A DNA stretch of 64,000 nucleotides from Eutreptiella sp. 'Long Island Sound 2002' (taxonomy: Eukaryota; Protista; Euglenida), in assembly GCA_964036045.1 (NCBI GenBank), contig OZ038378.1:22506001-22570000 (forward strand), read 5' to 3'. Positions 8,730-47,252 of the stretch are shown in pieces. Under the pieces are notes generated by a model. It made no database searches, was not told the origin of the DNA, and worked only from the letters and a program-made list of their open reading frames with translations. The position numbers and the translations under genes are program-made. Each line of letters begins with the position of its first letter. Position 1 is the first letter of the stretch.

Positions 8730-21165
<12,436 letters not shown>

Positions 21166-29020: not shown

Positions 29021-30933
29021 CTGCTGCATTGGAAACCTTTGTTCACTAGGAATGTTATCAAGATGCGGTGCAGGTGGTGAATGGACAGTTTAAGATTGAC
29101 TCTATCTCCTTTGCCATTCCAACTTCCAATTCACCACCTCACTGCTCACCGGGCCCGTAATCTCGATCTGGTGGGTGGATTTCAGGGTCACGGGAAGGTC
29201 CCTTATGATTGGGCGCTGTGCGGGAGCTGTGCAGAACCACCCCTACATTGTATGCAACCAGGTTGGGGTGCCTCTCAAAGACTTTGGTGGTGTGGTGCTC
29301 TAGATTTACCCTGCATTGCCGTGTTGCCAGGCCTTGGGCCAATTGAAGGACAATGAGTCAGCGCATTGCAGGACATGAGCACAAGAGCAGATGGAACATG
29401 ACGAAAGAAAGATTGCATACAGCAAGCCCTTTCCGATGCCCCCGGACCTTGTTTAAATTGGAGAATTTGCACGACTATTTTTTTTGGTCTGTCCTTGTCT
29501 GTCCCCGTCAATTTTTTCTTGCAATCAAAGCGTCGGTTCCCCACCTGCACCACAAAACGTGGTTCATGTGTCAGCAGCCCCTCTCAGGCATTTTGGACAC
29601 TGGGGTACCACAAGTGACAGGTTGATACGCGTCAGCTGCCTCCGCAAGGCATGCAGGGAGAACCCATGAAACGTCCCAGCCACAACATCTCATTCTGTGT
29701 AGACTGTCATGTTAGAGCCATGAGACTGCTATGCTGTGGTAGGAGGGACAACGCAGTGCACCAGGCATGCCCCTGCCTCGATCTGTCTTTGTTGCCAGCA
29801 TATGCAGGGCCAGGGGGCTGCTTGTATGGGGGAGACCATGCAATTACATGGACAGTCTGATACTATCGGAGAGCTATGGGCCTGCTGGCGGGGGGGGGGG
29901 TGTTGACATAAATGCTGAGTAGGAAGCAGGTGAGGGAGGCTGGCAATGGGTATAATACTGGAAAAAACACTAAGAAAAATGAAGTAAAGGGTGTGTCCAT
30001 CTCACTGCCATCTCTGTAGCCCCAACTTGCAGGGCAGCAAACCCGACTTTCGTGTCACATGGCTGTGGTGGAAGTTGCATTCCGGCAGATCCCTCCAAAC
30101 CAACCACCAGTAGTCTTTCCCCCCTCTGGCCACCCCCACGGACCCCACCTACTGACTCACATACCCCAAGCCGCAGCAAGTGTGACACACCAAAATGTGG
30201 TCCGTAGTTCCGTTGGACTTTGTGTGCAACCTGTGCCATTCCCAGTTCCAATTCGTCGCAAACGTCCGTGTGACTACATGTTTGTGGCTTTGTGTGTATG
30301 TGTGTGTGGGGGTATGTTTGCTGCTGTTTGTTTGATTGCATCCCTGGTTGTGTGTTCCTGTGATTCTAGGCCTGCAATTGTGTGATTGTGTACCCCTCTC
30401 CACCCCCTCCTTGCTCAGCCAACATGTGTGTGTGTGTGTGTGTGTGTGAAATCGTATGTGTGTGCTCGTGTGTAATTGGCTTTAAAGAGCCACGTCATGG
30501 GATGTGCACGTGAAGATGATGTTTCTTGCTTTTGCCCGTCGAGCAGAGAGAGTTGTTGGCAAGGCTTGTCACGCAGCAGGTGCAAGAGAATGTGACTGGG
30601 GGTATTACCTGCGGTACCCGGCGGTGGTATCTTTGGCATCCGCCCCCTGTTGCTACAATTTAAAGATAAAGCCTCTGAGTTAACCTCTGTTCCGCAGCTC
30701 CTGCCTTTTTTCATTGTGGTTCTGTCTGTGCTATGCCAACGCCAACGTACACCTGAAGTTGCATGCACGCATGTACATGCGTATCTGTAGTGTGTGTTTT
30801 GTATTTGTTGTGTGCATCGTGTTGATGACGCAGATACTGGTCCTGAAAGGTCGGTTCCAGAGCTACTTCCCAGCCCCAAATCGTCTGTGTGGATCAAGGC
30901 TGCCTGTCTGTTCTGCAGAGTCCACATATTGCA

Positions 30934-30996
30934 ATGGCCAGTAGTCCCACTGCGAAGCAGAACGCACTGAGCTTCCTCCCTGCGAATGGTTCGGGG
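30934..30996 (+). CDS. Possible first coding exon of the HIT-like gene (MASSPTAKQNALSFLPANGSG)
   Basis: ATG lies 15 nt after a ttctgcag acceptor-like site. Phase-0 donors gtgtgc (30997) or gtcaac (31021) are compatible with exon 32012. No homology support. Confidence 0.3.
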
Positions 30997-32011
30997 GTGT
31001 GCACCCTGCAGCTTGCGCAGGTCAACACACCATTACCCACAGTGGACCAAGTCAGCACCATGGTCTGTTCCCTGCTTTGCCCAGTGTTCAACCCGAACAA
31101 CACAACGAATCTGCGGGGATGCCATAGGGAGATGTGTATATCTCGCCGTGGGTGCGGAGGGGGTGCTACCCACAATCCTGTACCTTCCACCGTTCGTTGG
31201 ACGTCGGTGCATTCATGGCCAAACAACGGCTCGTCCAAGCATCAGGGGGACAAGTTTCCGCAACGTTTCAGAACCGTGGAATGATCCTTTTTCTGATCAT
31301 CATGGTGACCATCAGATTTTGGTGGCAAGTTGTATTTGGCAAGGGATTTGCTGGATGATTCATGCATCCCGGCTTTTCCTGCTCTCCTGGTCCCACAGTC
31401 AGCCCCAAATCCAGCCCGTGTGCTCCTGTACTGTGTGCAAACAATGGCGTGTCCAAACAACAGTGCTGTGTCCGCAGCGGTGGTCCCTTTTTTACCTTAG
31501 GCTTTGGGTCCTGAAGGAAGTGTTCGGAGCAAACGGAGTAACTGGAGCAAGGGGTAAGTGTGGCACATGGTTGAGTAGGGGTACAAGGGATGTAATTCAT
31601 TGGATTGGAACCACATTCTCGAATTGGCATACCTGAAGACGAGGCTTGAGGCGTCGATGAGATAGGAACCAGGCTGAGGCCAAGGTGACCTAGACTGGAA
31701 CGTTTGAAAGCTCCAGTGCAGAGTCCGTTTTTGGTGTTGCTGGGGCATTTGAGGGCTTGGCAAACGTGGATTTGCTTTTTAATGCTCCAGTTCCAGTGGC
31801 ACCTCATCCTCCCTTTCGTGCTGCCGCTGCTCCATTCAATTATACGGTCGAGCTGCGTGCCCTGTGCCGCTTTCATTTATGTGTTTCGAAGTCCACTTTG
31901 TGTCTACGCTTGGCTGCGTCTGCCATGCCGCTTGGCAGGGGTTTGGGAGGAGGCACCCTTTAACCTGAACTCATTCCCTTCCACTTTCATCTGTGTCTCT
32001 TCGACCTGCAG

Positions 32012-32236
32012 GGGAGCGCTAAACTGGGGTTCGAAGGGAATTACGACCAATTTTTGGCCCAGTCCAAATCGCAGGACAGGCTCAAAGTCCAAATGAAGAA
32101 CAAGGTCAAGAAGTGTTCATGTGGCAAACCCTGTGCATTCACACTGACGGAATGCAATTCGTGTGGTGCGAGCCTCGTTGACCTGGAAATCACATACACT
32201 AACAACGTCTTCATGGGCTTCATCTATGGTCTGCAG
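32012..32236 (+). CDS. HIT-like gene exon with Cys cluster: GSAKLGFEGNYDQFLAQSKSQDRLKVQMKNKVKKCSCGKPCAFTLTECNSCGASLVDLEITYTNNVFMGFIYGLQ
   Basis: Acceptor acctgcag, donor gtgtgc; coding-like composition. Confidence 0.85.
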
Positions 32237-35200
32237 GTGTGCCCCCCTTTGTGCCACCATTGCTCCATTCTCCTGCTTTCCCTTCAGGCAGTACTTGCAG
32301 GGTACTCCGCACCTGCGCTTGCAAAACTCCGCGGCCTTCAATGGATTGTGTGCTCACGTGTTGTTGTAGGGATGCATCTGATTGTTGCCATTCATTACGG
32401 TTGCAATATGTGAGGGATGTGTTTTGAAGTGTGTCTGTGGCAGTCCGCATGATGCCTTTTACACCTTTCGACCTAGGATGTGAATGATGGCCACATAATC
32501 CAAACGGAGCCTGAAGCTGTGGTCAGTTCGATTTACGCTGGAACAAATGAATCTAGTCCGCGAACAGCAACAGCTGCATCATGGAACGTACCCGCCCACC
32601 CCTGTTCGAAAGAAGCATTCATTCACAAAGAAACACACAACTGTAACACACCGAAAACACAAACAGCAACAGGAGTATTGGGCAGCTGGAGATAAAGGGT
32701 GCACACATCTCCTTCGATTGGCTTTCATGCCAGTCAGACCATAAGCACGGTGACTTTGCTCAATGCATCATGCGTCATGCCCTGCCTGGCAATGGCATCG
32801 CATGTAATGTGGTCCTGTATCTGTGGCTGTGGTGTTGTATGCAGGAGAGCTCGGCAACGGAGAGCGTGCCAACTTTTGAAGCTGTCCCAAGACGACTGTA
32901 TTGACAAATAGTGTGTCCCGTTGGACAGGTGAGCAATTTCTTCAAATGTTGACGATTGGCCGGACGAGTGCATGTACGCCCCCCCTCCCCCCCCTGAATA
33001 GCAACCGCCCTTGAATAGTAATCCAGGGAGGGGGGGGGGGGGGGCGAGGGAACCGTCACTTTCAGTTTTCCAAATTTACTTTATTGAGCTTCTCCTGTGT
33101 GTTTGCTGGTTGGAAAAGGTGGTATTACTGGAGCATTGCTGTGGACTTCAATTTTCTTTCATCCACCCTGTATCATACGAACACTTAGTTTTTCGCAAGT
33201 TCAGCCATGGATGTCCATTCCAGTGGCCCCTGTTGAGCATGTGCAGCTCTTCAAAGTCAAATACTCACAAAAAAAGTGGCACACAGAGCCTGTCTCTCAG
33301 TAGAGCTGAACATGCATCCCAACAGGCAGTTTCCGGGTCTTTTCGTGGTTCATATGCCCTCATGTTTGCATGTTTTCCTTCATGCCACGCGTCCTTTGTG
33401 TTCCCTCGGGGGGCGACAGAATCGTCATTTTGGGTACGTTCCCCCAGGTGTGAAGATACCATCGCGCGCAGGTGGTTACTATTTCAAGGGGGGAGAGGGT
33501 ACAGCGGTGGGTGCAGTAATGGTACCACGCCGGTGAACAGGAAATCGGCAAAAAGGGAATCATGTCATTCCCATGCACAGCTGTTGCCCATCACCTCTGT
33601 GAACCTGTCACACAGCATGATGTATTTGCCTGTCCTCCAGAATGTGTCTCCATCTACCAGGCGTGCACTCCTTCACCCATGGGACGACCTGCTTCCGCAA
33701 CCTGGTCCCGGATTTTTCTTCGGGCACAGGGTGCTTAGGGTGTTTCATGTGCAGTTCTGGTGGGTCGTTGTGGTTTTGCCGAATTTTGCGGTGTACCAGC
33801 TGGTGCGTGGCAAGTGGGCATGACAGGGCCCTGCAGACACATTGCAAAGACAACCAATGCCTCCTCCCCCCATACGTGGTGTGACAGAAGTCCCCGAAAA
33901 CTACTCCTCAAAACGGGATTTTGAGCGTGCCGTTGCATCATTTATGGGTCGAACCCCTCAGAATGGAGTAATACTGCACCAGCCATGCCATGCACTGCCG
34001 GGCTTCAGCCGCTTCTGTGTTGTTTTTGCATTAAGTTGGCTTTTGGGGGGGGGGGGGGGGGCACTGCACAGCATTTCGCAGTCATCTGTCTCTGCCACAA
34101 CATACCGACATAATGGGGCACTGTGCCTTTGCGTTATCCAATTTGTCATTTCAGGGGATGACCGTTTCACTGCGGTATGAATCGGAGTCCTATTTGTGCT
34201 TCGACGATCTCTTGCAGCTCTCAGTGGCTCACCTCAATTGCATTCCCACATCCATTTACTGCCCTGACTGGCGGCTACTGCTGAAAAACCCAAAGGAAGG
34301 TACAACCTGTTGTTCCCAACGACCATGGGAAATCTTCTGTAAAGACGTGCTGTTTGTGTGTTTCCGTGTGTGGGTGTGTGTGTGTGTGTGCAATGTGTGT
34401 TGTGTGTTGTGTGTTGTGTGTTGACATGCCAGAGTGTTCGTTTGGCAGTTGTGGTCTGGTGGGGTCTCCCCAAGGAAGGCAGTATATGTGAAGGTGTGGA
34501 TTGCTGGCACCAACTGCGAAATGTCGCAAGCAGGCTTCCATAGTATGTACCCCTCTGCTGTTCCCATCAGCCTGGGTTGGTAGACCACACCACGGTTCCC
34601 AACGTGCTGTGCTGTTGTTTGTTACCGAGTTTTAGGTCTGCAGCCTTTGAGCTATGTACTGTAGCCCCCCCCCCCCCCCTATGTCAAATGCCGTGTCCAA
34701 CAAACACTTCCGTTCGGACCGTATTTTTTGAGGACATAATTAATTACGTACTTAATTATATGCCAGGCTTCAGAATCGAGGTTTCAGGCTAAAGGATTAG
34801 GGAAATGAGGGGTTGTGGTGAGTAACTGTGGGTAAATTTGTAAAGCAGGATGTCCCTCAACTACAGGACCTCTATTGCCACCATGACTGATTCTCTGCTT
34901 GCACCTGGCCAGGAGGTGCTACACAAGCGGTCTCCGCCCCAAAGGTCCCTAAGCTAGATCAGGCTGCCACTTATGCCTGTGCCAAGAACAACGAGGGCCC
35001 CAAGCCTGGGGAGCATGTTCAGCTTTTCCGCATGAAATGGGACCACAACAAGGGCTTCTACACTGATAAGTGCTAATGGGAGGCCTCCATTGCTTTGTAC
35101 TTTGAATGGGCTGGGTGTCTTGTGCCTAGGGATGTGTTACCGCCGTTTCGCAATATTGTCGCGCGCACCGAATGACGTGTGAAACGAACACTCCCGCTCG

Positions 35201-38200
35201 GACCGTATTTTTTGAGGACGAAATTGTTTGTTGGAGGGGGGGGGGGGGGTTACTGTGTGTGCTTGGCATTGTGCTGTCCTGGATGGGCTATGGCGCAGGC
35301 TTCCAGGTACTTTGTGAGTGGTGAGATGGCTCATTGCAAGAAGAGCAAAAATCTGGGCCACTGAGGTTGTATTCTGTGCATGCGCGACGACTGCAGCTGT
35401 GAGGTGCCGCTAACAATTTTGCACGGAGGAGACCCTGGTCAGCGATGGCCTCAAGGGCCCACTCGGGGCTCGAAAGGCTTTCTGTGTTTCTAGTTTGCAT
35501 GGTTGCTGCGGCAGGTGGTATCTCCACAAGTGTGTACGCATGCGTGCACCGGTCAGCTGGTTACGCCCACCACCATTGCTGTACTACTACAGTATAGTTG
35601 TCTGCCTATTTCTACTGCGACTGGACCCTTGGTGCAGCAGCTTGCCCCTTTGTGATGTTGGCGATGTCAGTGAGAAGTCGTCCTTGCACCAGGGTGCTTC
35701 GTAAACTGAAAGGGATGATTTGGTGATACCAAATGGTAGCAAGCACAGAACACCAGTCGCCTACCACTTTACCACTGTTGTTTTATGCGTCCACCTCATT
35801 GTTCTTCTCAGCGTCCAATACGTACTTATCGTTGTGCCAACCACAGGGTGTATTTGGGTGTTGGCATTCTCGCATTGTGCGTGCCCGTATGTGCGTGATT
35901 GCATGCGTGCGTGTGTGCGTGTGTGCGTGCGCGTGTGTCTGATTGTCTGCCTCGCTCAACAGATGAACGGCACTCACACCAGTCTTGTTCCTCCACAACC
36001 CCGACCCCAACCCCTATCCTGCACATGTCTATGGATGTAGAAGGTTGGATTTGTGTTTGTATGTATGCGCGCGCATGTGTGTATGCAAGGGTGAGTGTGG
36101 GCATGTGTGTGTGTCTGTGTACGTCTTTGTCGAGATGCTTGTTTCTGTTTTCTGCGCAAGTGTGTATGTGTGTATGTCTTTTTTGTAGGGTGGATGTGTA
36201 TTTGTGTGTTTCTGTGTTTGTGCGTGTGTGGGAGGCCGCAGGGTGGCTTTCCTTTCCACTTTTGGTGTCATCAAGCTGGCTACCATCTGTCAATCTGCCG
36301 GGCTGCGGCGGTACTGACTGCTGCTGTCCTGGGTCTCTGGCTGGGGTCGGTGTGTCTTGGAGTTGGGGAGCTCCGGTGTGTGCGCCACCCTACCCATACA
36401 GTGCAGGATGTCGCACAGCTCCTCGGGACGGCGCTCCCTAATATGAAGAGGCACACGTGTGTGTGCCCCTTTATGTATGTGTGCATGTGTGTGTGTGTGT
36501 GTGTGTGTGTGTTGCCAGTGTGTTGTGAGTGTCTATTTTTAGTGTGAGCGTCAGTGTCAGTACTTTGCGCTGGTGCCTGTTGTGGTGTGAGTCCCTCATG
36601 CAGGAGCCTTCAGGCCTTTGCTGCTTCCATCTTCTTTCGTTCCGTCAGTACCCTGTCCAAGACAACGATCAGCTGCAGGCAAGGGCCTTGCGCTTTGCAC
36701 ATTGAGAAAACAGTCTGCCATGTTTCGCCTGTCACAGAAAGGCGTGCCATGGCTTTGTTGTTGTTGCGGCCTGACGAGACAAATCCACACTCAGACAACC
36801 GTTTTCTTACTCACTCTGTCAAACCCGCGCGCATGTGTGGCAGCCATCAGTAAAGATCAGTGGCCATTACGTGCCAACCAGCTGTTGGTCCCCCACTGTG
36901 CTCCAAGGGTTCCTGTCCCCGGACGGTTGCTTTTGTCGCGTCCTGTGTCCCACTGCCCACCCCTGTACACCCGTTTCAGGGCTCAAGATTGTCAACGAGC
37001 TGTTCGACACATGTTGGGAGGCTTTCGTCAAACAGTTCTATGGTAACGATGCCTGGCGCACACGAATGCTGAAGGGCTCACCCAGCCCGGAAGCCCTCAA
37101 GAAGCACGTGATTGCTGGGTTCAACTACCCCCCATCGCAGTACCAGCTCCACCTGCAGTTCATCGTCCCCCCGATGGTGCCATTTCATTACTTTCAGTAC
37201 AAGAACGGGATCCACTACACCCCCAAGCGCTTCTTCCCAATCGAGTACGTCCGCAAGGTTTCCCACCCACGTGCGTCCAGTGCTGGATCTTTCATGGACC
37301 CCCGCTCGTTCCCTGCTGCAACCTGTTCACATAATGGCCCATCAGACTGGCTTGTGTTCACGTGCATGTTCATGTTTCGCCTGTCACAGAAAGGCGTGCC
37401 ATGGCTTTGTTGTTGTTGCGGCCTGACGAGACAAATCCACACTCAGACAACCGCTTTCTTACTCACTCTGTCAAACCCGCGCGCATGTGTGGCAGCCATC
37501 AGTAAAGAGTCAGTGGCCATTACGTGCCAACCAGCTGTTGGTCCCCCACTGTGCTCCAAGGGTTCCTGTCCCCGGACAGTTGCTTTTGTCGCGTCACTGG
37601 GCCTGTCGAATCCGAAACCTCTTCCACTCTTGGGATGTTGTTCTTGCCTAGGGTCACCTTTGCCCTATCGCATGTGAGTCACAGGGTTCAGGCCTCTTCG
37701 CCTTGCCCGATGCGCGAGTACTAAGTGTGTTTTGATGCGCACATACATGACCTGGAATGCAGCGAAGGAAACGAAAGGCAGACGCTTAGAACAAGTGATG
37801 GGTCTGGCCCCATCACTAGTCACTTGGTCACCGCCTGTGCTGCAGCCAGACTGCAATTAACAAAAGCACTGCAAGTGTGTGCTGTGAGTGCCACAAGTTG
37901 CAGGCACAACATAGTCCTGTGTGGAGCTTGGAGCTTGAGTTTGATGCCTAAATCAAGATCTTTCTGCGCTGGGGAATGGAGTCCCTATTGTGCACATGGG
38001 TGGGCAAGATTCCTCGAAGCATCCAGTAACCCACCCACTCACTGGACAAGCACTGAGTGGATGGTTGGGATTGTTCAACTCAGCGGCGTAATCTGCCAGC
38101 TGCAGCTGCTGGCGGCCCTCATAACACAAATCTACAGAAGCACGGCGCATGCCCCGGACCTTTCACGAAGGTCATCAACAAAGCATCGTGATGATCACAG

Positions 38201-41200
38201 CACAAAGAGGCCATAATCACGTTAATACCAAGAATATGACAAAGGCAATCTACCAGGAATTACGGCCCGTCTAATTGTTACCCTCAGGACATTGCTTCCC
38301 TGTACTGTTGATTATATTTGTGGCAAGCCGTGTAGATTGTGAGGGTGGCTGCTTGAACATTGGCGTTTAAACGAATAGCTAGATCCAATTGCATAGCACG
38401 CACAGACGGTGGCACAACCAAATTATTGTTGCGCAGCAATAATGTTGTTGGGTCACCGTCCATGCTACCTGATTCGGCAAAAGAACCAGGAACAAAGGAA
38501 GAAAAATCGAGGGCGAACGTGCCAATGATACCACAGTGTGTCTCTCTGCACAATTAGTCTCTCAGACAGCCTGCCTTTGAGTCGGAGACACAGCAACAGG
38601 GGGACACAGATTGTTATGGAAACTTTCCTCCCCAAAAAATTCTATTGCATTTGGCAAGTCCACCTCGCAGAGAATCTACCCCAAGAAACACACACCCAAA
38701 ATTGGATAAAAACTACATATAAAGGTATGTACATATATGGGCGTTTTTACCGGGGGGGGGGGGGGGTCAGTTCTGGGGTTTTAACGCAAAGTGGGAGGTT
38801 TTTTTGCCGTTTTTGGATTTTCGGCCAGAGATCGGTATGGACTTTGCCCAAAAGTTGGTCCCCCCCTATTTTAGACATGGAGAATTCAAAAATCAAGGTT
38901 TCGTGGCCCAACAAAACGGTGACGGGGCTATCCGAGGTCCCGAACACGCGCGATTTTCAGGGAATTTGCTGCTACTGGTCTGGCGTACGTACAGGGTTTT
39001 CACGGTGCTTGGCCCGGTGCTCAAACATATTGACACTATGGCAAAAAAAAAAGTAGCACGGGGTCACTGAGGTCGCAAAAAGCGCCAACATAGCGAAAAT
39101 GGCTGAAAACTGCATAAGCTGCAAAAGCGCTCGTCCCACTCCGCTGCATACAACCCCCATGGAGTTAGGACCTGGGAACATTTTTTTGTCTCAAAAATCA
39201 AAAAATTGAAAAAACACCAAAAGATTCATGATTTTCAACCCAAATAAAGGGGGCGTCATTTTTTGACCCCCCCCCCCTCCCCCCCACCTCCCTCAAAAGC
39301 TCCAAAAATTGAATGGATGGATGGATGGAGAGGAAGCATTCCGGGGGCCGCATCCCGAGGCCATGGGGGCCGCATCCCGAGGCCATGATCCCCAAACTAA
39401 GGGCCCATGTCTATGATCGCTTCACTGTCCTAGAGAATGCTTTTCCTGCGGCGCCTGCGGCGCGCCCTACAGCGCGCAGTTTGGGAAACCTGCCTAATTT
39501 GTGGATTTTTTTAGATTCCACCTTGTTGTGCTCCCCGCGGGGCTTGGGGCCCGGTTTTACCATATAGTATGGCCCTTTTATGTAGCCATATTGATCTCTC
39601 CCAACCATGGGGACCTTGAGAAGGCACAAGTTTTGTTACGGGGTGTCCACCCGGGGGCAGGGGTTAGGTAGCCACTATGGCCACATGTGGGCCATTTCTG
39701 ATTTTGTCCCTGTGCTGAGCATTGGGAGCCATTGATTTCTCCCCACTAGCGGGGGACACTTGTTAAATGCAATCGTCAGCCCACGGACAAGGGGCCCCTG
39801 GCACGGGCCGCCGCCACCCACATCGAGCATTGTGTCCGATCCATCTACTCTCCAGGAGGAACCGCTAGCCTTGCTACGCTAGCGGTGCCCCACTCAACAA
39901 TGAGTGTGGGCGAAGCGTGGAGTCGCGTGACCACCAGCGTTTGGTGGCCGTGTGGGATCCCGGGAGTGGAATTGCGGTACACGATGTGAAATGTGGGTTG
40001 CTCCACTTGTTTGTTTGTTTGTTTCACAACCCCATATTGGTGAGTATCGTTGCGCAAGGCAGGCTTGTGACCGTCGGCGTAACCGTTGCGTTGCGCTGTG
40101 TGGAATGGTGAATCTTTGTCCCGTGTTTTGGTGATTTCAGATTTGGTCACGTTTCATCTATCATGTCTTCCATACTTGGGGAGATAGACCAAACAAGGGT
40201 AACATTGTTGTTCCATTCTCCCTGCCCGCAGCTCGCTTTTCATAGATGTGCAGCATAATTTCCTGTGTCTCTCCTCCTACGCCCCTCCTTCTTAACCACA
40301 GTAGAAGGGTGAAACTTCCCTACCACGCTTTACACGTTGAGCCGGAGCCGTAGTCTTCACATTCATGGAGCGATGGTGTCAAAAGATCACCGTGTGCTAT
40401 CCTTGGTACCTGTATGAAAGGTAGTTTTGTTCATCATAAATCATTTTATGAAATATGAACGCAATTTGCTCTTGATGGGGTACCCATGGGCCATTTTGTA
40501 CAAAACTTGGGGGGTTGGGTCAACACCCTCGAGGTGAGTTTTTTTTTTGTGGACCGGGGCTTTTGGAAAAATTGCCATTTTTGCCAGTTTATACAAATTA
40601 TGAAAACATCCTCCCCTGTTCATAATTCCATTCATAATTCCATTCATAATTCAGAACTCGTTTTATGAACGCGCCGATTGTTTTATGAACGCGTTTTATG
40701 AACGCGTTTTATGGTCAAATGCACAGGCACACAAAAGTTGCTCAATTTTCAATCTGTCCTGTACATGTACTTCACTGCTTTTCTTTGTCCCTTGTCCTTG
40801 CTTGTTCTTGCTGCCCTAAACCTCAGGGCTGGGGCCTGTCGGGTCCTCCCAAAGGGGGGCCGTGGCCTGGGTTTCGCCCCCATCCGGGGCCTGGGCATGG
40901 GTTTGGGCAGGTGGTTGGGCTGCGGGTTTGGCCGAGGGTTGCGCCGGGGCATCCACCTCCATGGGGGCGGCCTCAGGGGCAGCTTTGGGCTGGGGCTGAG
41001 GGGCCTGCTTAGCCTCAAGCTTGGGTTTCAGGCTTAGCTGGCTTTGGGGCCGGCTCGGCCGGCGGGTCAGCGTCCGGTTTGGGGTTAGGCTTCTTTTTGG
41101 CCTTGGCGGCCTTCTTACCTGCAGCTGCAGCCTTCTACTGCTCCCAATGGGTCACTGTTGCAGCATGAGAGGCATACAACAGATGCCTCTCAACCCAAAA

Positions 41201-44200
41201 CATCTCCTTTTCCCCTTGGTGTTCCACCCACACTCTCCCCCCCGCCCCCTCCCACAACCGAGGTTACAACCCCCGGGTAGACACCATCGGTGTAGCATAA
41301 ACCTGTTCACCTGTTCACCTGTTCAACCGGGTCAGGTGACTCATCCCCCTCCAAAGAGGGGGGTTCCTCACGCCGCTTTTGCTGCTGCGGCTGCTTCCCC
41401 TTCACCGCCTTCCCATGTGCACGGGGGAGTGCCTGGTCCGACGATGAGCTGCTGCGCGATTCGAAGGACTTGCGCTTCTGCGTGGGGGGCTTTTTGGGTT
41501 GGGTGGGTTTTGGGGGGGGGGGGGGGGGGGGCAGGGCAGGGGGTTTGGGTTTCTCGGCGGGGGGGGGGGGGCTTTGCTGGGGAGGTGCTGCGGGGGCTAG
41601 GGGGGTTCAACCCACAACTGGACAACAGGATCTCCTCGTCAGGAGAGTCCTCCCACCCCAACTCACCAGGCTAGCCCAGCACGGCGTATTCGCCGCCCAA
41701 GTGTCCGTTGGGCGGCGGTACCGTTCCCACTCCCGCAACCCGGACAGGATAGAGCACCCCCGTTGCGGGTTGAGGAGCAGCAGCTGGTACAAGGCGGACA
41801 GGGCGATGCTGAACTCGGCGGTGCCCAGCCGGTAGCGGATGCGGACCCCCGCGACGTTCGCCGGGTTCAGTTCCATGTCCATGACCTGTGATAGTGCCAT
41901 TCATAAAATGCGTTCATAAAACGCGTTCATGGTTCATAAACGGGCAGTGCAGGGTCGCTGAATTATGAACGCCGAATTATGAACGAATTATGAACGAATT
42001 ATGAACGCAGATACCTCGAAATCGGGCTCTGGTCCGACGGTGCCCATGGCGCCCAGGGCGGTCCGGAAATGCGCAGCTGCGCTGGGAGGGGTGCCCTGGG
42101 GGGCGCCCGTAGGGGCCGTGGTGCTGCTGGTGGCCGGGGCTGCCCGGCCAAGGGGCTTGATGGGGCGGGTGATGGTGAGGCCCCCCACGGTCCCCTCGTA
42201 CGAGGCCTCCTGCCCCGGGTCATACACCCCCCCCCCCCAATGGATTCCCACTGGGGGATGCACTCCAACTTGCGCCCGGAGCGCTGCAGCTTCACCCACC
42301 CCCTTCCCTCCCAGTGTAGGAAACACAGTTCCCAATGGGACCCCCGCATCAAGGCCCCCCGCGGAGCGGCATACTCTCCCACGCATGCGGTTGCACAATC
42401 TGCCATATTCTGCTATAGTAGTGGTTTCCCGCCACACAGGCACACATGCAAGTGCATAATCTGCCATGCAGGCATGCACGCACGGCACTATCTACCACAC
42501 AGGCATGCATGTAGTGGCATAATCGGCCACACAGGCACCACATTATCTGCCACACACACCCTCACACACGCAATGGCATCATCCGCCACACGGGCTTGCA
42601 AGCAGTTGCTTGCGGTGACATTTGCCGCCACACAAGCTGTATCTGCCACACAAGCATGCATGCAGGTGCAAAATCCGCCACACAGCCATGCACACACAAC
42701 ATTAGCGGCGACAGTGGCACACATGGAAGAGCATACTCTGCCACACATGCGGTTGCACAATCTGCCATATTCCGCTATACTAGTGGTTTCTGCCACCCAG
42801 GCACGCATGCAGTTGCATAATTGGCCACACAAGGAGGCATGCAGGTGCATACTCTGCCATGCAGGCATGCACGCACTACACTATCTGCCACACAGGCATG
42901 CATGTAGTGGCATAATTGGCCACACAGGCACCGCATGATGTGCCACACACACCCTCACGCACGCAGTGGCATCATCCGCCACACGGGCTTGCACGTAGTT
43001 GCCTGCGGTCACCTTTGCCGCTACACAAGCTGTATCTGGCACACACGCATGCATGCAAGCGCAAAATCTGCCACACAGGCATGCGCGCACAGCATTAGCT
43101 GCAACACTGGCACGCATGCAGCAGCATACTTTGCCACACATGCGGTTGCACAATCTGCCATATTCTGATGTATTAGTGGTTTCTGCCACACAAGCATGCA
43201 TGTTGTTGCATAACCTGTCACACATGCATGCATGTAGGTGCCATGCCACACATGCATGCATGCAGGTGCCATGCAGGCATGCACGCACTGCACTATGTGC
43301 CACACAAGCATGCATACAACCGCATAATCTGCCATGCAGGCGCGCATGCAGGTGCAGAATTTGCCATGCCATCTGCCACACAGGCATGAACACACTCGCA
43401 TAATCTGTCACACATCTATGCATGCAGGCGCATAGTTTGCTACACAAGCTATATCTGCTACACAAGCATGCATGCAATGCATAGTCTGGCACTCAGGCAT
43501 GCACACACCGCATTATCTGCCACACAGGCACGCATGCAGCGGCATAATCCGCTATACATGCGGTTGCACTATCTGCCACATTCAGCCATACTAGTTGTAT
43601 CCGCCACACAGGCATGCATGCGGTTGCATAACCTGCCACATAGGCATGCATGCAGTTGCTGCATCCGCCACACAGGGACAAATACATGTGCATCACAGGT
43701 ATGCATGTCGTTGCATAGCCTGCTACACAAGCTGTGTGTGCCACAGCGGCATCAATATTTTGGCCTAAATCGTCACACAGATATGCAAGTAGTCGCATAT
43801 TCCGCCACACAGGCTGTATCTGCCACGCACGCATGAATGCACTCGCAGTTTCTGTCACACAAGTATGCACATCGTCGCTTACTCTACTGAGCAAGGTGTA
43901 CCTGCCACATAGGCATGCATGCAGTGGTATTATCTGTGCCACATGCATGCATAAGGTTGCATTATGTGCCACATATGCATGCATACCATTGCATAACTGT
44001 CACGCAGGCATGCATGCACGTGTATGATCTGCCACAAGGACACTCATGTAGCTGCACAATGTACCACACAGGCACACATGTAGTGGCCGAATCCGCCACA
44101 CATCCGTGCAAGCATGGGCACATCCTTCACACACCCTATCCTGTACTCGAGAGACCCGAGGGCACGTAAAACACAAAACAAGCCAGGAGCCGCCTGCGGG

Positions 44201-46597
44201 GATGCACGCCGGTGCAACATCGTGATGAACCACCTTGTCCAGCCAGCAACCCGCAAGGGAAGCTCAATATCCAACTGCCGGAGTAAAGCACAAAGCGGAA
44301 AGTGGCGGTTCCCTCGCCCCCCCCACATACTCTGCACAAGTGAGGACTAGGCACAAGGGGTGGTGTATGAGAGCAAGTACAGCATGGTCCACACGCCCAC
44401 ACCGAGTACAAGATTGCCCAAACCCATGCTGCGAGCATCGGGGCAGATCCCAAGAGGGGCCCGAGCACCGCCGTCACATGGGCTGTGTCTGCAGCTGGGT
44501 CCCTGAACTCTTCTCGGCGGGGCATGCATGCACCTCCCAACTTGTACTCTAGCTAGGCCGCTCCCGGCGGCCAACGCCCCGCTCATGGCGGGGCCTGGGC
44601 CCCTCTCCCTAGTACACACCGGGGGCAGGTCAGGTAGGGAGGGGCACGGGCTAGGGGGCAGGGTAGGGCGGGTCAAGAGGGAGCACGAACACAAACCGGA
44701 AGCGAGGCAGAGGAACCAATGGAGGAGGGAACGACAGGGTGTGGGGCGCTCAGTAATCACAATGTGGTGGCAAGTGCGTTGTTCTAGACACGCTCCCCCA
44801 CAAACAGTGGAGTTCGCCCCACCACCTCCACTTGCCACTGTGGGGCAAGTGGAGGGCAGGCTGACGGTGTACCGCAGCTAACAAACTAAGCGAGACGCAG
44901 ACCACAACGAGCCATTCGCCTCACCCGCCGGGACCACCAGTCTCCCAAAAGTTGGTTTCAAGTGGGGGGGGGCTTGGGGGGTCCGGACCAAAAACTCATT
45001 GGGGGATGCGTTTGTTGGACAAAACAATGATTTTACAAGGGGTTAAACTAACAATTCAACCCCTTGGGGTAGGGTACGCGAATAGGCCCAAAATGCGGGG
45101 GGGGGGGGGGGGTATGTGGTGTTTCCCCCTATGTACGCCTGCCTGGCTTTGATCTAACAACCTCTGCGAGGTGATTTGGGTCTGGCGAAATTTAATGCAG
45201 CTGATTGTCCAGCACCAACATTTGGGTTGTGTCCAAACTTCCCGTGCCGAAATTATCCCCAGACGAACTCTCCCCCCCCTGTATGTTTTAGGAGGCGCCA
45301 GCTGGGTGGTGTGCCCTCACGGCCCCCTGAAGCCAACGGGGCTGTAGTGCCGCATTCCGGGAGTCTTTCCTGGCAGGTCCCTTCCTACTGCCTAAGGCAT
45401 GTCCAAGCCGATTGGCAGCACCACCTGTCCTGAGGCATGTCCAAGCCGATTGGCAGCACCACCTGTGCCTTATGGCAGTCAAGGAGTGTGGGTCCTCCCC
45501 AGTTGTGCCACACGTGAGGGCTGCCCTCGCGGGGCAGCTTGCTAGCATGCATCTGTGCCTTCGAGGCCACGTTCCACCCTGATGGGCTCAGTGTAAGGCT
45601 CCCCTAGCCTCCCCCACCGGGGTCTGGAGCACCGGTCCTAACCCAACCCAAGCCCCACTGTACCCCCCCGCCCCTTTGTCCACCCCCCCCCTTTTGTCCA
45701 TCCCCCCCCCCCTGGTCACTTGGCCCATGAACAATCAGAAATCAATAGGGAATCACCGGCGCCAAGGTGCTGAACAAAATTTTTAATTGGGTATACTAGA
45801 ATTTAGGTTATTGTTGTGTGGTGTCCGTCCCCCCCGGGGGTGGGGGGGAACCGTCGTCCCTGGGGGGGGGGGATGGACGGGATATATCTTTAAGAGGGCA
45901 GATGTTTGTCTTTTGAATTTGGGTCTTGTTGTGTTCGGATGTTCCGGGGTTTGATGTGCTTTTATCGCTTCATGTATTGTTCTGTGGTATGCTATTGCGC
46001 CACTGGCGGCCCCAGATTCCTGTCCCTACGCCTGTCCCTGCTCTGGGGCAGGAGCATGTACATACACGAGTGCTGAATCTGGCTGCAACCACAGATTCCC
46101 ATTAGTAGCATGAATTTCTGTTGCATCCATCAGGGAGGGGGGCATTACACCCGTCCCCAACACAGCCGGGTCAGGGCGGCGTTTCCATTGGCAACAGAGC
46201 TTCTCCATCCCCTGCCCCATGTGCCTTCTCCAAGGTGCTGGAGCTGAACCATGCAGTCCCCGACGTGGAAAGCAAGGGCGCTGATGACATCATCCAGTTG
46301 TTCAATGGGAAGGGCGTCGAGTACGACAGCATCCACTCACATTGCTACGCGCGCTATGACGTGAGCCACAACGAACTTGCCAATTGGAACAAGAGCGATT
46401 TCTCGGCAGTGGTGGTGGACGGCGTGGCGGTGTACGACATCAAAACCGGATCGCTCATCCCGGACTGTGACACCAAGAGCCTGCAGGCCACGGACAAGCA
46501 TGCCCTGCAGAGCTATGGGCGTCCCTATGACGCCAACAACAAGCCCAGTACCAAGTACTACTCGCATCCACGTAAGGAGGCGTTGACGGCCCTGTGA
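32012..46597 (+). CDS. Uncharacterised zinc-ribbon + HIT-superfamily (DcpS/aprataxin-like) protein; join(32012-32236,34155-34299,36980-37257,46235-46597), 5'-incomplete
   Basis: Four GT-AG exons join in frame (1011 nt, 336 aa + stop). Motifs: KKCSCGKPCAFTLTECNSCG; YLCFDDLLQLSVAHLNCIPT (HIT N-terminal F.D...A..H.L.IP-like); VIAGFNYPPSQYQLHLQF (DcpS-like YLHY.PSYYHLHVHF). Confidence 0.85.
34155..34299 (+). CDS. HIT-like gene exon: GMTVSLRYESESYLCFDDLLQLSVAHLNCIPTSIYCPDWRLLLKNPKE
   Basis: Acceptor catttcag, donor gtacaa; phases match neighbouring exons. Confidence 0.87.
36719..36942. repeat. 224-bp direct repeat, copy 1 (upstream of the catalytic exon)
   Basis: Near-identical to 37371-37595. 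Confidence 0.95.
36980..37257 (+). CDS. HIT-like gene catalytic exon: (G)LKIVNELFDTCWEAFVKQFYGNDAWRTRMLKGSPSPEALKKHVIAGFNYPPSQYQLHLQFIVPPMVPFHYFQYKNGIHYTPKRFFPIEYVRK
   Basis: Acceptor cgtttcag, donor gtttcc; HIT-like motif. Confidence 0.9.
37371..37595. repeat. 225-bp direct repeat, copy 2 (downstream of the catalytic exon)
   Basis: Differs from 36719-36942 by about two substitutions and one inserted base. Confidence 0.95.
40618..40713 (+). repeat. ~100-bp self-complementary element: (gttcataattc-like)x3 followed by (ttttatgaacgc)x3
   Basis: GTTCATAA and TTATGAAC halves are reverse complements. An inverted copy lies at 41886-42014. Confidence 0.85.
41886..42014 (-). other. 129-nt hairpin-forming GT-AG intron, phase 0
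   Basis: Minus strand reads ttcgag|gtatct...ctatcacag|gtcatg. Removing it joins ORF 41988-42488 and ORF 41607-41900 in frame. The body is gttcataa repeats followed by ttatgaac repeats. Confidence 0.6.
42370..44110. repeat. Degenerate satellite of ctgccacaca/gcatgcatgc units with a ~360-420-bp higher-order period
   Basis: catact..ccacacatgcggttgcacaatctgccatattc recurs near 42370, 42732, 43125 and 43544. Confidence 0.9.
46235..46597 (+). CDS. HIT-like gene last exon: VLELNHAVPDVESKGADDIIQLFNGKGVEYDSIHSHCYARYDVSHNELANW...DKHALQSYGRPYDANNKPSTKYYSHPRKEALTAL*
   Basis: Acceptor ttctccaag, phase 0, GC3-rich coding composition, TGA stop. Confidence 0.85.
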   Translation: MLELNHAVPDVESKGADDIIQLFNGKGVEYDSIHSHCYARYDVSHNELANWNKSDFSAVVVDGVAVYDIKTGSLIPDCDTKSLQATDKHALQSYGRPYDANNKPSTKYYSHPRKEALTAL

Positions 46598-47214
46598 GAC
46601 ACCAGGAGTATTTCTGCCAGGGCAGACTTGCCCACGCCCTCGCCGGCAGAGGCATCTCCAATCCGTATGCAAAGCCCCACGCCTGCCTCCAGCAGTAGCC
46701 TCAGCAACTACGGCATGACCCCTGTATCCTGAAGGAAGCAGGGGGGGTCAAGTGGCCCAGGCCCAGCGCATTCTCTTGAGTTTGTCCTTATTGTTGGGTA
46801 AGGCACGCCCAGTCCGGCAGTTGCATGCAACCGCCGGCGGTTACTGGCCAGCCAACCATCGTCAGTGTCGGTTGACTGAAGTACAGGCCGTTTCCCTATG
46901 GTTCTTGGCCGGTCCTCTGGTGCTCGCCCGCCCTGCCGCTCTGCAGCTGTCTGGCCGCGTCTCCCTCAAGGGCAAGACCAGCAGTCTCTTGGTGCATTTC
47001 ACTGCCCATAACTCCTGTCAAGCCGTCCACAAGGCCATCAGAGCTCGGGGGCAGGGTCAGCCGTGCCCAGGAAGTTTCAACTCTTGCCAGGGGAACGCAA
47101 GGACGGCCAGGAAAAGCATGGAAGGCGTAGGTGTCCCTGCTAAACCACATGGTGGGCAAACTCTCCACGCACACGACGTGCACAGCAGGTCCATAAGGGT
47201 TGTATGTACATTTG

Positions 47215-47252
<38 letters not shown>

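What the first reader, a model, noticed from the sequence alone, without database searches (positions are those of the whole stretch)
32012..46597. Uncharacterised zinc-ribbon + HIT-fold enzyme with a QxHxQ triad
Seen: four exons splice in frame to a 336-aa product with CxCGKPC...CxxC, FDDLLQLSVAHLNCIP and GFNYPPSQYQLHLQF. Established: HIT hydrolases (Hint, aprataxin, scavenger decapping enzyme DcpS) carry HxHxH with the middle His as nucleophile. DcpS reads roughly YLHY.PSYYHLHVHF, and the GalT branch uses HxHxQ. Inference: this protein keeps the nucleophilic His but has Gln at both flanking positions and Asn for the upstream His. That suggests a distinct nucleotidyl hydrolase/transferase branch, for example acting on caps or cap-like dinucleotides, nucleotide sugars or adenylated substrates. 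I do not recognise a named family with this architecture.
Basis: partly seen in the sequence, partly recalled or inferred. Interest (0 to 1): 0.78.

Follow-up and report, generated by a model that had tools for sequence, protein, structure and literature searches.

The report
Uncharacterised HIT-fold enzyme with QxHxQ
A real, expressed euglenid gene encodes a member of a widespread but unstudied protist branch of the histidine-triad (HIT) nucleotide-enzyme superfamily that keeps only the catalytic histidine of the triad, so its substrate and chemistry are open.

Summary
The model is incomplete. A further coding exon (start codon 30934, ends 31062) and a spliced-leader-capped 5'UTR exon (29703-29764) lie upstream, so the protein has 379 aa, not 336.

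The protein belongs to a large eukaryote-only family: 612 clusters at 50% identity, all unnamed or "hypothetical" (Eutreptiella, Pelomyxa, dinoflagellates and others). An AlphaFold model (pLDDT 87.6) matches aprataxin (Z 11.4), DcpS (Z 10.7) and HINT (Z 9.0). Pfam DcpS_C matches 24 of 30 relatives, but this protein scores below the cut-off.

The signature N-x-PPSQ-x-Q-x-H-x-Q is close to invariant. Alignment to S. pombe aprataxin puts His232 on the nucleophile His147, Gln234 on His149, Asn223 on His138 and Asp144 on the ribose-binding Asp63. A four-Cys zinc ribbon precedes the HIT core. A 125-residue C-terminal extension with a conserved DK..LQNYGRPY motif has no known fold.

Most likely it is an active nucleotidyl transferase or hydrolase that works through a His232-NMP intermediate. 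Substrate and activity are untested. I rate it a new variant of a known kind, of moderate interest.

The parts
29703..29764 (+). 5'UTR exon. It is preceded by an AG acceptor (29701-29702), where the transcript instead carries the spliced-leader tail TTTTTTTTCG. It contains an upstream ATG (29720) in frame with the CDS.
   Evidence: L001 vs window blastn; genomic sequence
30919..31062 (+). The upstream border is ambiguous by 3 nt because CAG is repeated.
   Evidence: tblastn of P0002 residues 3-51 at 100%; blastn; sequence; homologue P0003 starts at the equivalent Met
32012..32236 (+). Coding exon (P0002 residues 52-126). It contains the four-Cys zinc ribbon C86, C88, C99, C102 at 32114-32164 and the first HIT strand and helix.
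   Evidence: Cys conservation; Zn_ribbon_3 hits in 6 of 30 relatives
34155..34299 (+). Coding exon (residues 127-175, phase 1 at its end). It holds invariant R133, D143, D144 (34203-34208) and H152 (34230-34232).
   Evidence: alignment to HIT protein 4egu and to Hnt3 Asp63
36980..37257 (+). Coding exon (residues 175-267). It holds the HIT-motif strand: N223 (37123-37125), S227, Q230 (37144-37146), H232 (37150-37152), Q234 (37156-37158), then H253 and R258.
46235..46597 (+). Last coding exon (residues 268-387 plus TGA at 46595-46597). This is the family-specific C-terminal extension with the DK..LQ.YGRPY motif at 46493-46528 and Y376.
   Evidence: no fold match when modelled alone
46598..47242 (+). 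3'UTR, at least as far as the end of the transcript contig.
   Evidence: L001 877-1888 aligns to 46231-47242

Best explanation
The gene (29703-47242, + strand; six exons, five of them coding; SL trans-spliced) encodes a 379-aa protein with three parts: an N-terminal four-Cys zinc ribbon, a HIT-fold catalytic core of the aprataxin/DcpS type, and a family-specific C-terminal extension. It belongs to a large, eukaryote-only, uncharacterised family defined by N-x-PPSQ-x-Q-x-H-x-Q in place of the histidine triad. Most likely mechanism (inferred): the protein binds a ribonucleoside 5'-phosphate joined to its partner by a phosphoanhydride bond. Asp144 holds the ribose hydroxyls. His232 attacks the alpha-phosphorus to form a covalent enzyme-NMP intermediate. 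Ser227, Gln234 and Asn223 hydrogen-bond the phosphoryl oxygens where aprataxin uses His149 and His138. With no imidazole available as a general acid or base, the leaving group should be a good one (phosphate or pyrophosphate). The second step may be transfer to phosphate or another acceptor, as in the HxHxQ enzymes (GalT, Apa1/2, GDP-L-galactose phosphorylase), rather than simple hydrolysis. Conserved basic and aromatic residues outside the core (R133, H253, R258, K355, R363, Y361, Y365, Y376) probably shape the leaving-group site. Shown here: gene structure, expression, fold, family and residue conservation. Inferred: catalysis, substrate class and the roles of the zinc ribbon and C-terminal motif. 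The confidence given is for the mechanism as a whole; that this is a real, expressed gene for a HIT-fold protein of this family I hold at about 0.95.
For: Splicing and expression. Spliced-leader tail absent from the genome. Family: 31 word-search hits, 355 clusters at 90% identity, 612 representatives at 50% identity with 261 at E<=1e-30. HIT fold: model pLDDT 87.6, pTM 0.87; Foldseek top hits Hnt3/aprataxin at E 2.6e-5 and DcpS at 8e-4; VIA-align aprataxin Z 11.4, DcpS Z 10.7/10.2/9.7, HINT2 Z 9.0; Atlas neighbours are all HIT/DcpS_C/aprataxin clusters. Pfam DcpS_C matches 24 of 30 members at E<=0.01, best 5e-9; P0003, P0029 and P0168 exceed the gathering score. Residue equivalences from profile-to-PDB alignments: D144 = Hnt3 Asp63, L145 = Met64, N223 = His138, Q230 = Asn145, H232 = His147, Q234 = His149. 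Roles of those aprataxin residues are taken from PMC4499129. Conservation over 173 sequences: H232 165/167, S227 167, D144 158, H152 162, N223 166, Q230 158, Q234 157. In a minority His replaces Gln at either flank (8 with His at +2 [9 counting the HQxHxH form] and 6 with His at -2, of 149) and these are scattered on the tree, as expected if both residues serve as hydrogen-bond donors to phosphate. Gln at +2 is the hallmark of HIT-superfamily transferases and phosphorylases (PMC7705103; PMC10069634).
Against: No biochemical data exist for any member. His149Ala abolishes aprataxin activity (PMC4499129), so loss of that His could mean loss of catalysis rather than a change of chemistry. This protein itself scores only 16.2 bits against DcpS_C, below the 24-bit cut-off. 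No domain fusion or gene-neighbourhood clue to a substrate was found. The GalT/Apa2 folds themselves match only weakly (Z 3.3-3.8), so the transferase analogy rests on one residue.
Confidence: 0.6

Rival explanations
1. It is a pseudoenzyme or nucleotide (cap) reader. The HIT pocket still binds a nucleotide, but without the flanking histidines it does not turn over. The protein would act as a sensor, scaffold or sequestering factor, with the zinc ribbon and C-terminal extension mediating partner binding.
For: Three of the four histidines around the phosphate in aprataxin/DcpS-type enzymes are replaced by amides. His149Ala kills aprataxin. No activity is known for any member.
Against: The nucleophile His, the Ser five residues before it and the ribose-binding Asp are retained in about 99% of members across very deep eukaryotic divergence. 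Only 2 of 149 sequences have lost the His. Gln at +2 is compatible with full catalysis in GalT-branch enzymes. Asn already sits at the -2 position in active S. pombe aprataxin.
Confidence: 0.2
2. It is simply the euglenid and protist orthologue of aprataxin (a nucleic-acid 5'-adenylate or 3'-cap removing repair enzyme) or of DcpS (scavenger decapping), diverged in sequence but doing the canonical job. The N-terminal zinc ribbon would stand in for aprataxin's C-terminal zinc finger.
For: Aprataxin and DcpS are the best structural matches. Similarity to aprataxin continues past the HIT motif (the G-x-H-F/Y-T segment aligns with S-A-H-Y-I-S of Hnt3). A zinc module is present.
Against: No C2HE zinc finger and no DcpS N-terminal domain is detected. 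The catalytic His138 and His149 equivalents are absent. The conserved 125-residue C-terminal extension has no counterpart. Median family pI is about 6.6, not what a DNA-end binder would suggest, though this is weak evidence. Sequence similarity to aprataxin is marginal (E 0.5-0.9).
Confidence: 0.1
3. The gene model is an artefact: chance ORFs, a pseudogene or a mis-assembly.
For: None beyond the very long (9 kb) repeat-rich fourth coding intron.
Against: A spliced transcript at 100% identity is found in two studies. There are full-length homologues at up to 59% identity and hundreds more. The structure prediction is confident.
Confidence: 0.01

Closest known systems
Aprataxin / S. pombe Hnt3 (HIT-ZnF DNA/RNA 5'-deadenylase and 3'-decapping enzyme)
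   Same: Best fold match (VIA Z 11.4; Foldseek E 2.6e-5). Shared features: G-F-x-x-x-P-S-x-x-x-L-H-L strand, ribose-binding Asp, nucleophile His, a conserved His-aromatic segment after the HIT strand, and a zinc-binding module in the same polypeptide.
   Different: The zinc module is an N-terminal four-Cys ribbon, not a C-terminal C2HE finger. His138 is Asn and His149 is Gln. There is an extra conserved C-terminal extension of about 125 residues. Sequence similarity is only marginal (E about 0.5-0.9).
DcpS scavenger decapping enzyme (C-terminal HIT domain, Pfam PF11969)
   Same: Fold match Z 9.7-10.7. This is the only Pfam family hit (24 of 30 relatives).
   Different: No DcpS N-terminal domain-swapped dimerisation domain. 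QxHxQ instead of HxHxH. This protein is below the Pfam cut-off (16.2 vs 24 bits).
HINT-type HIT hydrolases (e.g. HINT2 6yi0, C. difficile 4egu)
   Same: Core alpha/beta fold (Z 8-9). The F-x-D-x-x-P-x-x-x-x-H-x-L-x-x-P nucleotide-binding segment aligns (best sequence hit in the PDB, E 0.005-0.014).
   Different: About three times larger, with N- and C-terminal additions and a long helical insert as in aprataxin/DcpS. The triad is reduced to a single His.
GalT / Apa1-Apa2 / GDP-L-galactose phosphorylase branch (HxHxQ nucleotidyl transferases and phosphorylases)
   Same: Gln two residues after the nucleophile His. This is the precedent that such an active site is catalytic and favours transfer or phosphorolysis.
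   Different: Weak structural match (Z 3.3-3.8). Those enzymes have duplicated half-barrel HIT domains and keep His at -2. There is no sequence relationship beyond the superfamily.

Membership tests
HIT superfamily | HIT alpha/beta fold | tested here: met
   AF2 model pLDDT 87.6. Top 50 Foldseek hits are all HIT proteins. VIA-align Z 11.4, 10.7 and 9.0 to aprataxin, DcpS and HINT2. Atlas neighbours are HIT/DcpS_C clusters.
HIT superfamily | Nucleophilic His in the hydrophobic-His-hydrophobic strand, preceded by the conserved Ser | tested here: met
   H232 aligns to Hnt3 His147. It is conserved in 165/167 sequences and S227 in 167.
HIT superfamily | Full histidine triad H-x-H-x-H | tested here: not met
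   Q-x-H-x-Q in 128 of 149 well-aligned members. His appears at a flank in only 8 (+2; 9 counting the HQxHxH form) and 6 (-2). The GalT branch and S. pombe aprataxin show that the full triad is not obligatory for membership.
HIT superfamily | Nucleoside-binding segment with the ribose-contacting Asp and the upstream His | tested here: met
   D144 aligns to Hnt3 Asp63 and H152 to the conserved His of 4egu. Both are invariant.
HIT superfamily | Nucleotidyl-transfer activity through a covalent His-NMP intermediate | not testable with these tools
   Requires biochemistry.
Pfam DcpS_C (PF11969) | Score at or above the gathering cut-off (24 bits) | tested here: inconclusive
   This protein scores 16.2 bits, E 0.015. 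Relatives P0003 (24.1), P0029 (25.3) and P0168 (32.5 bits) pass. 24 of 30 match at E<=0.01.
Aprataxin | C-terminal C2HE zinc finger packed on the HIT domain | tested here: not met
   No zf-C2HE hit in any of 30 members. The zinc ribbon is N-terminal.
Aprataxin | Catalytic His138/His147/His149 trio (S. pombe numbering) | tested here: not met
   Only His147 is kept; Asn and Gln take the other two positions.
DcpS | N-terminal DcpS domain (PF05652) plus a C-terminal HIT domain with HxHxH | tested here: not met
   No PF05652 hit. The motif is QxHxQ.
GalT / Apa1 branch | HxHxQ motif in a GalT-type duplicated HIT fold | tested here: not met
   Gln at +2 is present, but -2 is Gln and the fold match to GalT and Apa2 is weak (Z 3.3-3.8).

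The most novel reading that the evidence does not exclude
This family is a further, so far unrecognised functional branch of the HIT superfamily. It would be a zinc-ribbon-bearing enzyme with a His/Gln/Gln/Asn active site and a novel C-terminal substrate module. It would catalyse a nucleotidyl transfer or phosphorolysis on a substrate that known HIT branches do not handle, for example a cap-like or dinucleotide polyphosphate species, a nucleotide sugar or a nucleotidylated macromolecule. It is present across protist supergroups, and no animal, plant or fungal member was seen among the named hits.
Probability: 0.35. Interest if true: 0.65.

Novelty: new variant of a known kind. Interest (0 to 1): 0.5.

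Why it matters
HIT enzymes control nucleotide-linked signals and damage: caps, ApnA alarmones, adenylated DNA ends, nucleotide sugars and phosphoramidates. Here is a deeply conserved family (hundreds of clusters in Discoba, Amoebozoa, Alveolata, Rhizaria and probably Holozoa) with a distinct active-site signature and two unique appended modules. No source gives it a name and no paper was found on it. Defining its substrate would add a branch to a well-studied superfamily. It would also test how far the histidine triad can be reduced while keeping catalysis. And it could reveal a nucleotide-metabolic or RNA/DNA-end-processing step found in protists that is missing from the standard model organisms.

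Tried and rejected
- Pfam and PDB sequence searches exon by exon gave only sub-threshold hits. DcpS_C scored E 0.07 on exon 3, and the prostaglandin synthase hit is chance.
- All whole-protein steps used the database protein P0002, which is identical to the spliced product.
- Long family members (10 proteins of 539-928 aa) were scanned for informative domain fusions. None was found; one is a tandem duplication.
- Gene neighbourhoods of two intronless metagenomic homologues gave no functional link.
- The C-terminal extension was modelled alone (pLDDT 84). It has no fold match: Foldseek E>=1.8, VIA best Z 3.4. The sequence profile gave only a chance hit.
- The scan of 185,579 prokaryotic species genomes found one hit. 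It is an intron-split gene on a 7.3-kb contig of a "Gammaproteobacteria" MAG, which I read as eukaryotic contamination. The viral contig scan found none. Both scans used only exact conserved peptide patterns.
- Literature searches for QxHxQ, for HIT plus zinc ribbon, and for HIT/DcpS in Euglena found nothing relevant.
- A PDB search with the HIT region of P0168, meant to print a DcpS alignment, found nothing. The DcpS motif comparison therefore rests on memory.
- Rfam found no RNA gene in the window.
- Model coordinates are not exposed by the tools, so residue-to-residue distances around His232 could not be measured.
Full report
**1. Observation**

- 32012-32236: 75 codons
- 34155-34299: 48 codons plus 1 nt
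- 36980-37257: 2 nt plus 92 codons
- 46235-46597: 120 codons plus TGA

The quoted motifs are present. I searched the exons one by one by reference. Pfam gave only a weak DcpS_C hit on exon 3 (E 0.071, on the HIT-motif part of the model). The PDB sequence search gave nothing meaningful.

A word search used the uninterrupted ORF 36835-37677, restricted to the exon-3 residues. It returned 30 other proteins. One of them, P0002 (387 aa, from an assembled public run), is 100% identical over the exon.

**2. Gene structure and expression**

The contig encoding P0002 (L001, 1888 nt) aligns to the window at 100% identity in six blocks. Trimmed of the 1-3 bases that overlap at each junction, the exon spans are:

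- 29703-29764
- 30919-31062
- 32012-32236
- 34155-34299
- 36980-37257
- 46235-47242

L001 starts with sequencing adapter followed by TTTTTTTTCG. The genome at that point reads ...gtgtag. A T-run ending in CG spliced onto an AG acceptor matches the tail of the euglenid spliced leader as I know it (background knowledge). Together with the closest homologue being from Eutreptiella (59% identity), this points to a Euglena-type euglenid.

The conserved start is the ATG at 30934 (MASSPTAK...), which gives 379 aa. The first eight residues of P0002 come from a GTG start call inside the 5'UTR. An upstream ATG at 29720 is also in frame, so the true N-terminus is not settled.

Read laying on 31040-37039 shows one contig in X1 (2015 study) and one in X4 (2022 metatranscriptome). 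Each lies on the three exon pieces consecutively in its own coordinates. X8 and X12 cover the introns contiguously as genomic DNA.

I sent no self-joined sequence to any tool. P0002 served as the reference for the whole protein.

**3. Family**

- A profile of 30 homologues found 355 clusters at 90% identity.
- The exhaustive search found 612 representatives at 50% identity with E<=0.001, of which 261 have E<=1e-30.
- Every name given by a source is "hypothetical", "uncharacterized" or "unnamed".
- Named organisms are Eutreptiella gymnastica, Pelomyxa schiedti (two paralogues), Polarella glacialis, Prorocentrum cordatum and a chlorarachniophyte MMETSP entry. One identifier looks like Creolimax; this is my reading of the prefix.
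- None of the named hits among the best 120 is an animal, land plant or fungus.
- The Atlas cluster is 100% Eukaryota.
- The only "prokaryotic" locus is an intron-split copy on a short MAG contig, which I read as contamination.
- No viral contig encodes a relative.

**4. Fold**

AlphaFold2 with the 30-sequence alignment gives mean pLDDT 87.6 and pTM 0.87. Only residues 1-17 are disordered.

| Search | Result |
|---|---|
| Foldseek vs PDB | Hnt3/aprataxin first (E 2.6e-5), then human aprataxin, DcpS (8e-4) and small HIT proteins |
| VIA-align vs 48,161 representative chains | aprataxin Z 11.4; DcpS Z 10.7, 10.2, 9.7; HINT2 Z 9.0; GalT and Apa2 only Z 3.3-3.8 |
| Atlas shape search | only HIT/DcpS_C/aprataxin clusters |

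Pfam DcpS_C matches 24 of 30 members at E<=0.01 (best 5e-9), and three relatives pass the gathering score. The window's own protein scores 16.2 bits against a 24-bit cut-off.

The N-terminal CxxC...CxxC is conserved in essentially all full-length members. In euglenids and a few others the first pair is CxC. It hits zinc-ribbon models in some members.

The C-terminal 125 residues carry the second most conserved motif of the family: D354, K355, L358, Q359, Y361, G362, R363, P364, Y365, and then Y376. Modelled alone they have no recognisable fold.

**5. Active site**

Profile-to-PDB alignments put the family's strand ...G-F-N-Y-P-P-S-Q-Y-Q-L-H-L-Q-F on Hnt3's G-F-H-A-G-P-S-M-N-N-L-H-L-H-I, and D-D-L-L on R-D-M-F. 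With the 28-residue offset of the crystallised construct, the equivalences are:

| This protein | S. pombe aprataxin (Hnt3) |
|---|---|
| D144 | Asp63 |
| L145 | Met64 |
| N223 | His138 |
| Q230 | Asn145 |
| H232 | His147 |
| Q234 | His149 |

According to PMC4499129:

- His147 is the nucleophile that forms the covalent enzyme-NMP intermediate.
- His149 coordinates a non-bridging oxygen of the transition state, and His149Ala is inactive.
- His138 flanks the phosphate.
- Asp63 binds the ribose hydroxyls.
- Met64 stacks on the base.

Over 173 aligned family members, the nucleophile His, the Ser, the Asp and the upstream His152 are essentially invariant. So are Asn223, Gln230 and Gln234. Among 149 well-covered sequences:

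- 128 are N/Q-x-H-x-Q.
- 8 have His at +2 (N/QxHxH; one further sequence is HQxHxH) and 6 have His at -2, scattered on a midpoint-rooted tree.
- Only 2 lack the nucleophile.

Gln at +2 is the signature of the GalT/Apa1/GDP-L-galactose phosphorylase transferases. Asn at -2 in active S. pombe aprataxin shows that position need not be His.

**6. Interpretation**

Shown:

- The gene is real, expressed and SL-trans-spliced.
- The protein has a HIT fold closest to aprataxin/DcpS.
- The nucleotide-binding and nucleophile residues are intact.
- The auxiliary histidines are systematically replaced by amides.
- There is a zinc ribbon and a novel conserved C-terminal module.
- The family is uncharacterised and eukaryote-wide.

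Inferred: the protein is an active nucleotidyl-transfer enzyme acting on a ribonucleotide phosphoanhydride through a His232-NMP intermediate. It possibly works as a transferase or phosphorylase, and the C-terminal motif and conserved Arg/Lys/Tyr residues form the leaving-group site.

Small HIT chains align in the model up to residue 363-364. This hints that the Y-G-R strand occupies the position of the HIT C-terminal tail next to the active site, but without coordinates this stays a hint.

The median family pI of about 6.6 mildly favours a soluble metabolic enzyme over a dedicated nucleic-acid binder.

The main rival is a catalytically silent nucleotide or cap reader. Simple orthology to aprataxin or DcpS is unlikely given the missing defining domains and residues.

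**7. Novelty and verdict**

I found no paper on a QxHxQ HIT protein or on this architecture, and no database name. The superfamily and fold are known and Pfam partly captures the domain. The altered motif and the two flanking modules make it a new variant of a known kind. Interest is moderate: it would add a branch to a classic enzyme superfamily, but nothing here overturns current understanding, and the function still needs bench work.

Noticed in passing
window 29701-29764: The mRNA is trans-spliced. The transcript contig carries TTTTTTTTCG (a spliced-leader tail) directly before 29703, where the genome has an AG acceptor. The 5'UTR holds a 4-codon uORF (ATG 29709), an ATG in frame with the CDS (29720) and another short uORF, so the real N-terminus and the translational control are open.
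   Followed up: partly
window 29765-30918: The 5'UTR intron seems to begin with GC rather than GT (GC-AG). Alternatively its borders shift by up to 3 nt, because CAG is repeated at both ends. All four coding introns are GT-AG.
   Followed up: no
window 36719-36942 and 37371-37595: A direct repeat of about 225 nt at 99% identity (652-653 nt spacing) brackets exon 3 (36980-37257). It looks like a recent partial tandem duplication in the introns on either side of the catalytic-motif exon.
   Followed up: partly
window 42431-44000: A degenerate satellite of about 32 nt (higher-order period 393 nt, rich in GCATGCA/CACACAGGC) fills about 1.6 kb of the 9-kb fourth coding intron. It produces long spurious His/Cys/Ala-rich ORFs on both strands.
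   Followed up: partly
window 33040-33440 and 34640-35240: Intron segments with 300- to 500-fold higher contig depth than their surroundings in the genomic run X8 (about 10,000-15,000 vs about 30), and with many aberrant joints. These are high-copy dispersed repeats inside introns 2 and 3 of the coding region.
   Followed up: no
L002 2346-3751 (contig CAZYYU010000167.1): A 7.3-kb contig binned as an uncultured gammaproteobacterial MAG carries an intron-split homologue of this eukaryotic family (34% identity) and has no long ORFs. It is probably eukaryotic contamination of the bin.
   Followed up: partly
P0040 (886 aa) and other long family members: P0040 contains two tandem copies of the whole family unit. 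One copy has a deviant motif (S at the Asn position, and an E-Y-Q-L-H-L-H variant was seen by regular expression). P0242 carries EF-hand domains in the precomputed Pfam list.
   Followed up: no
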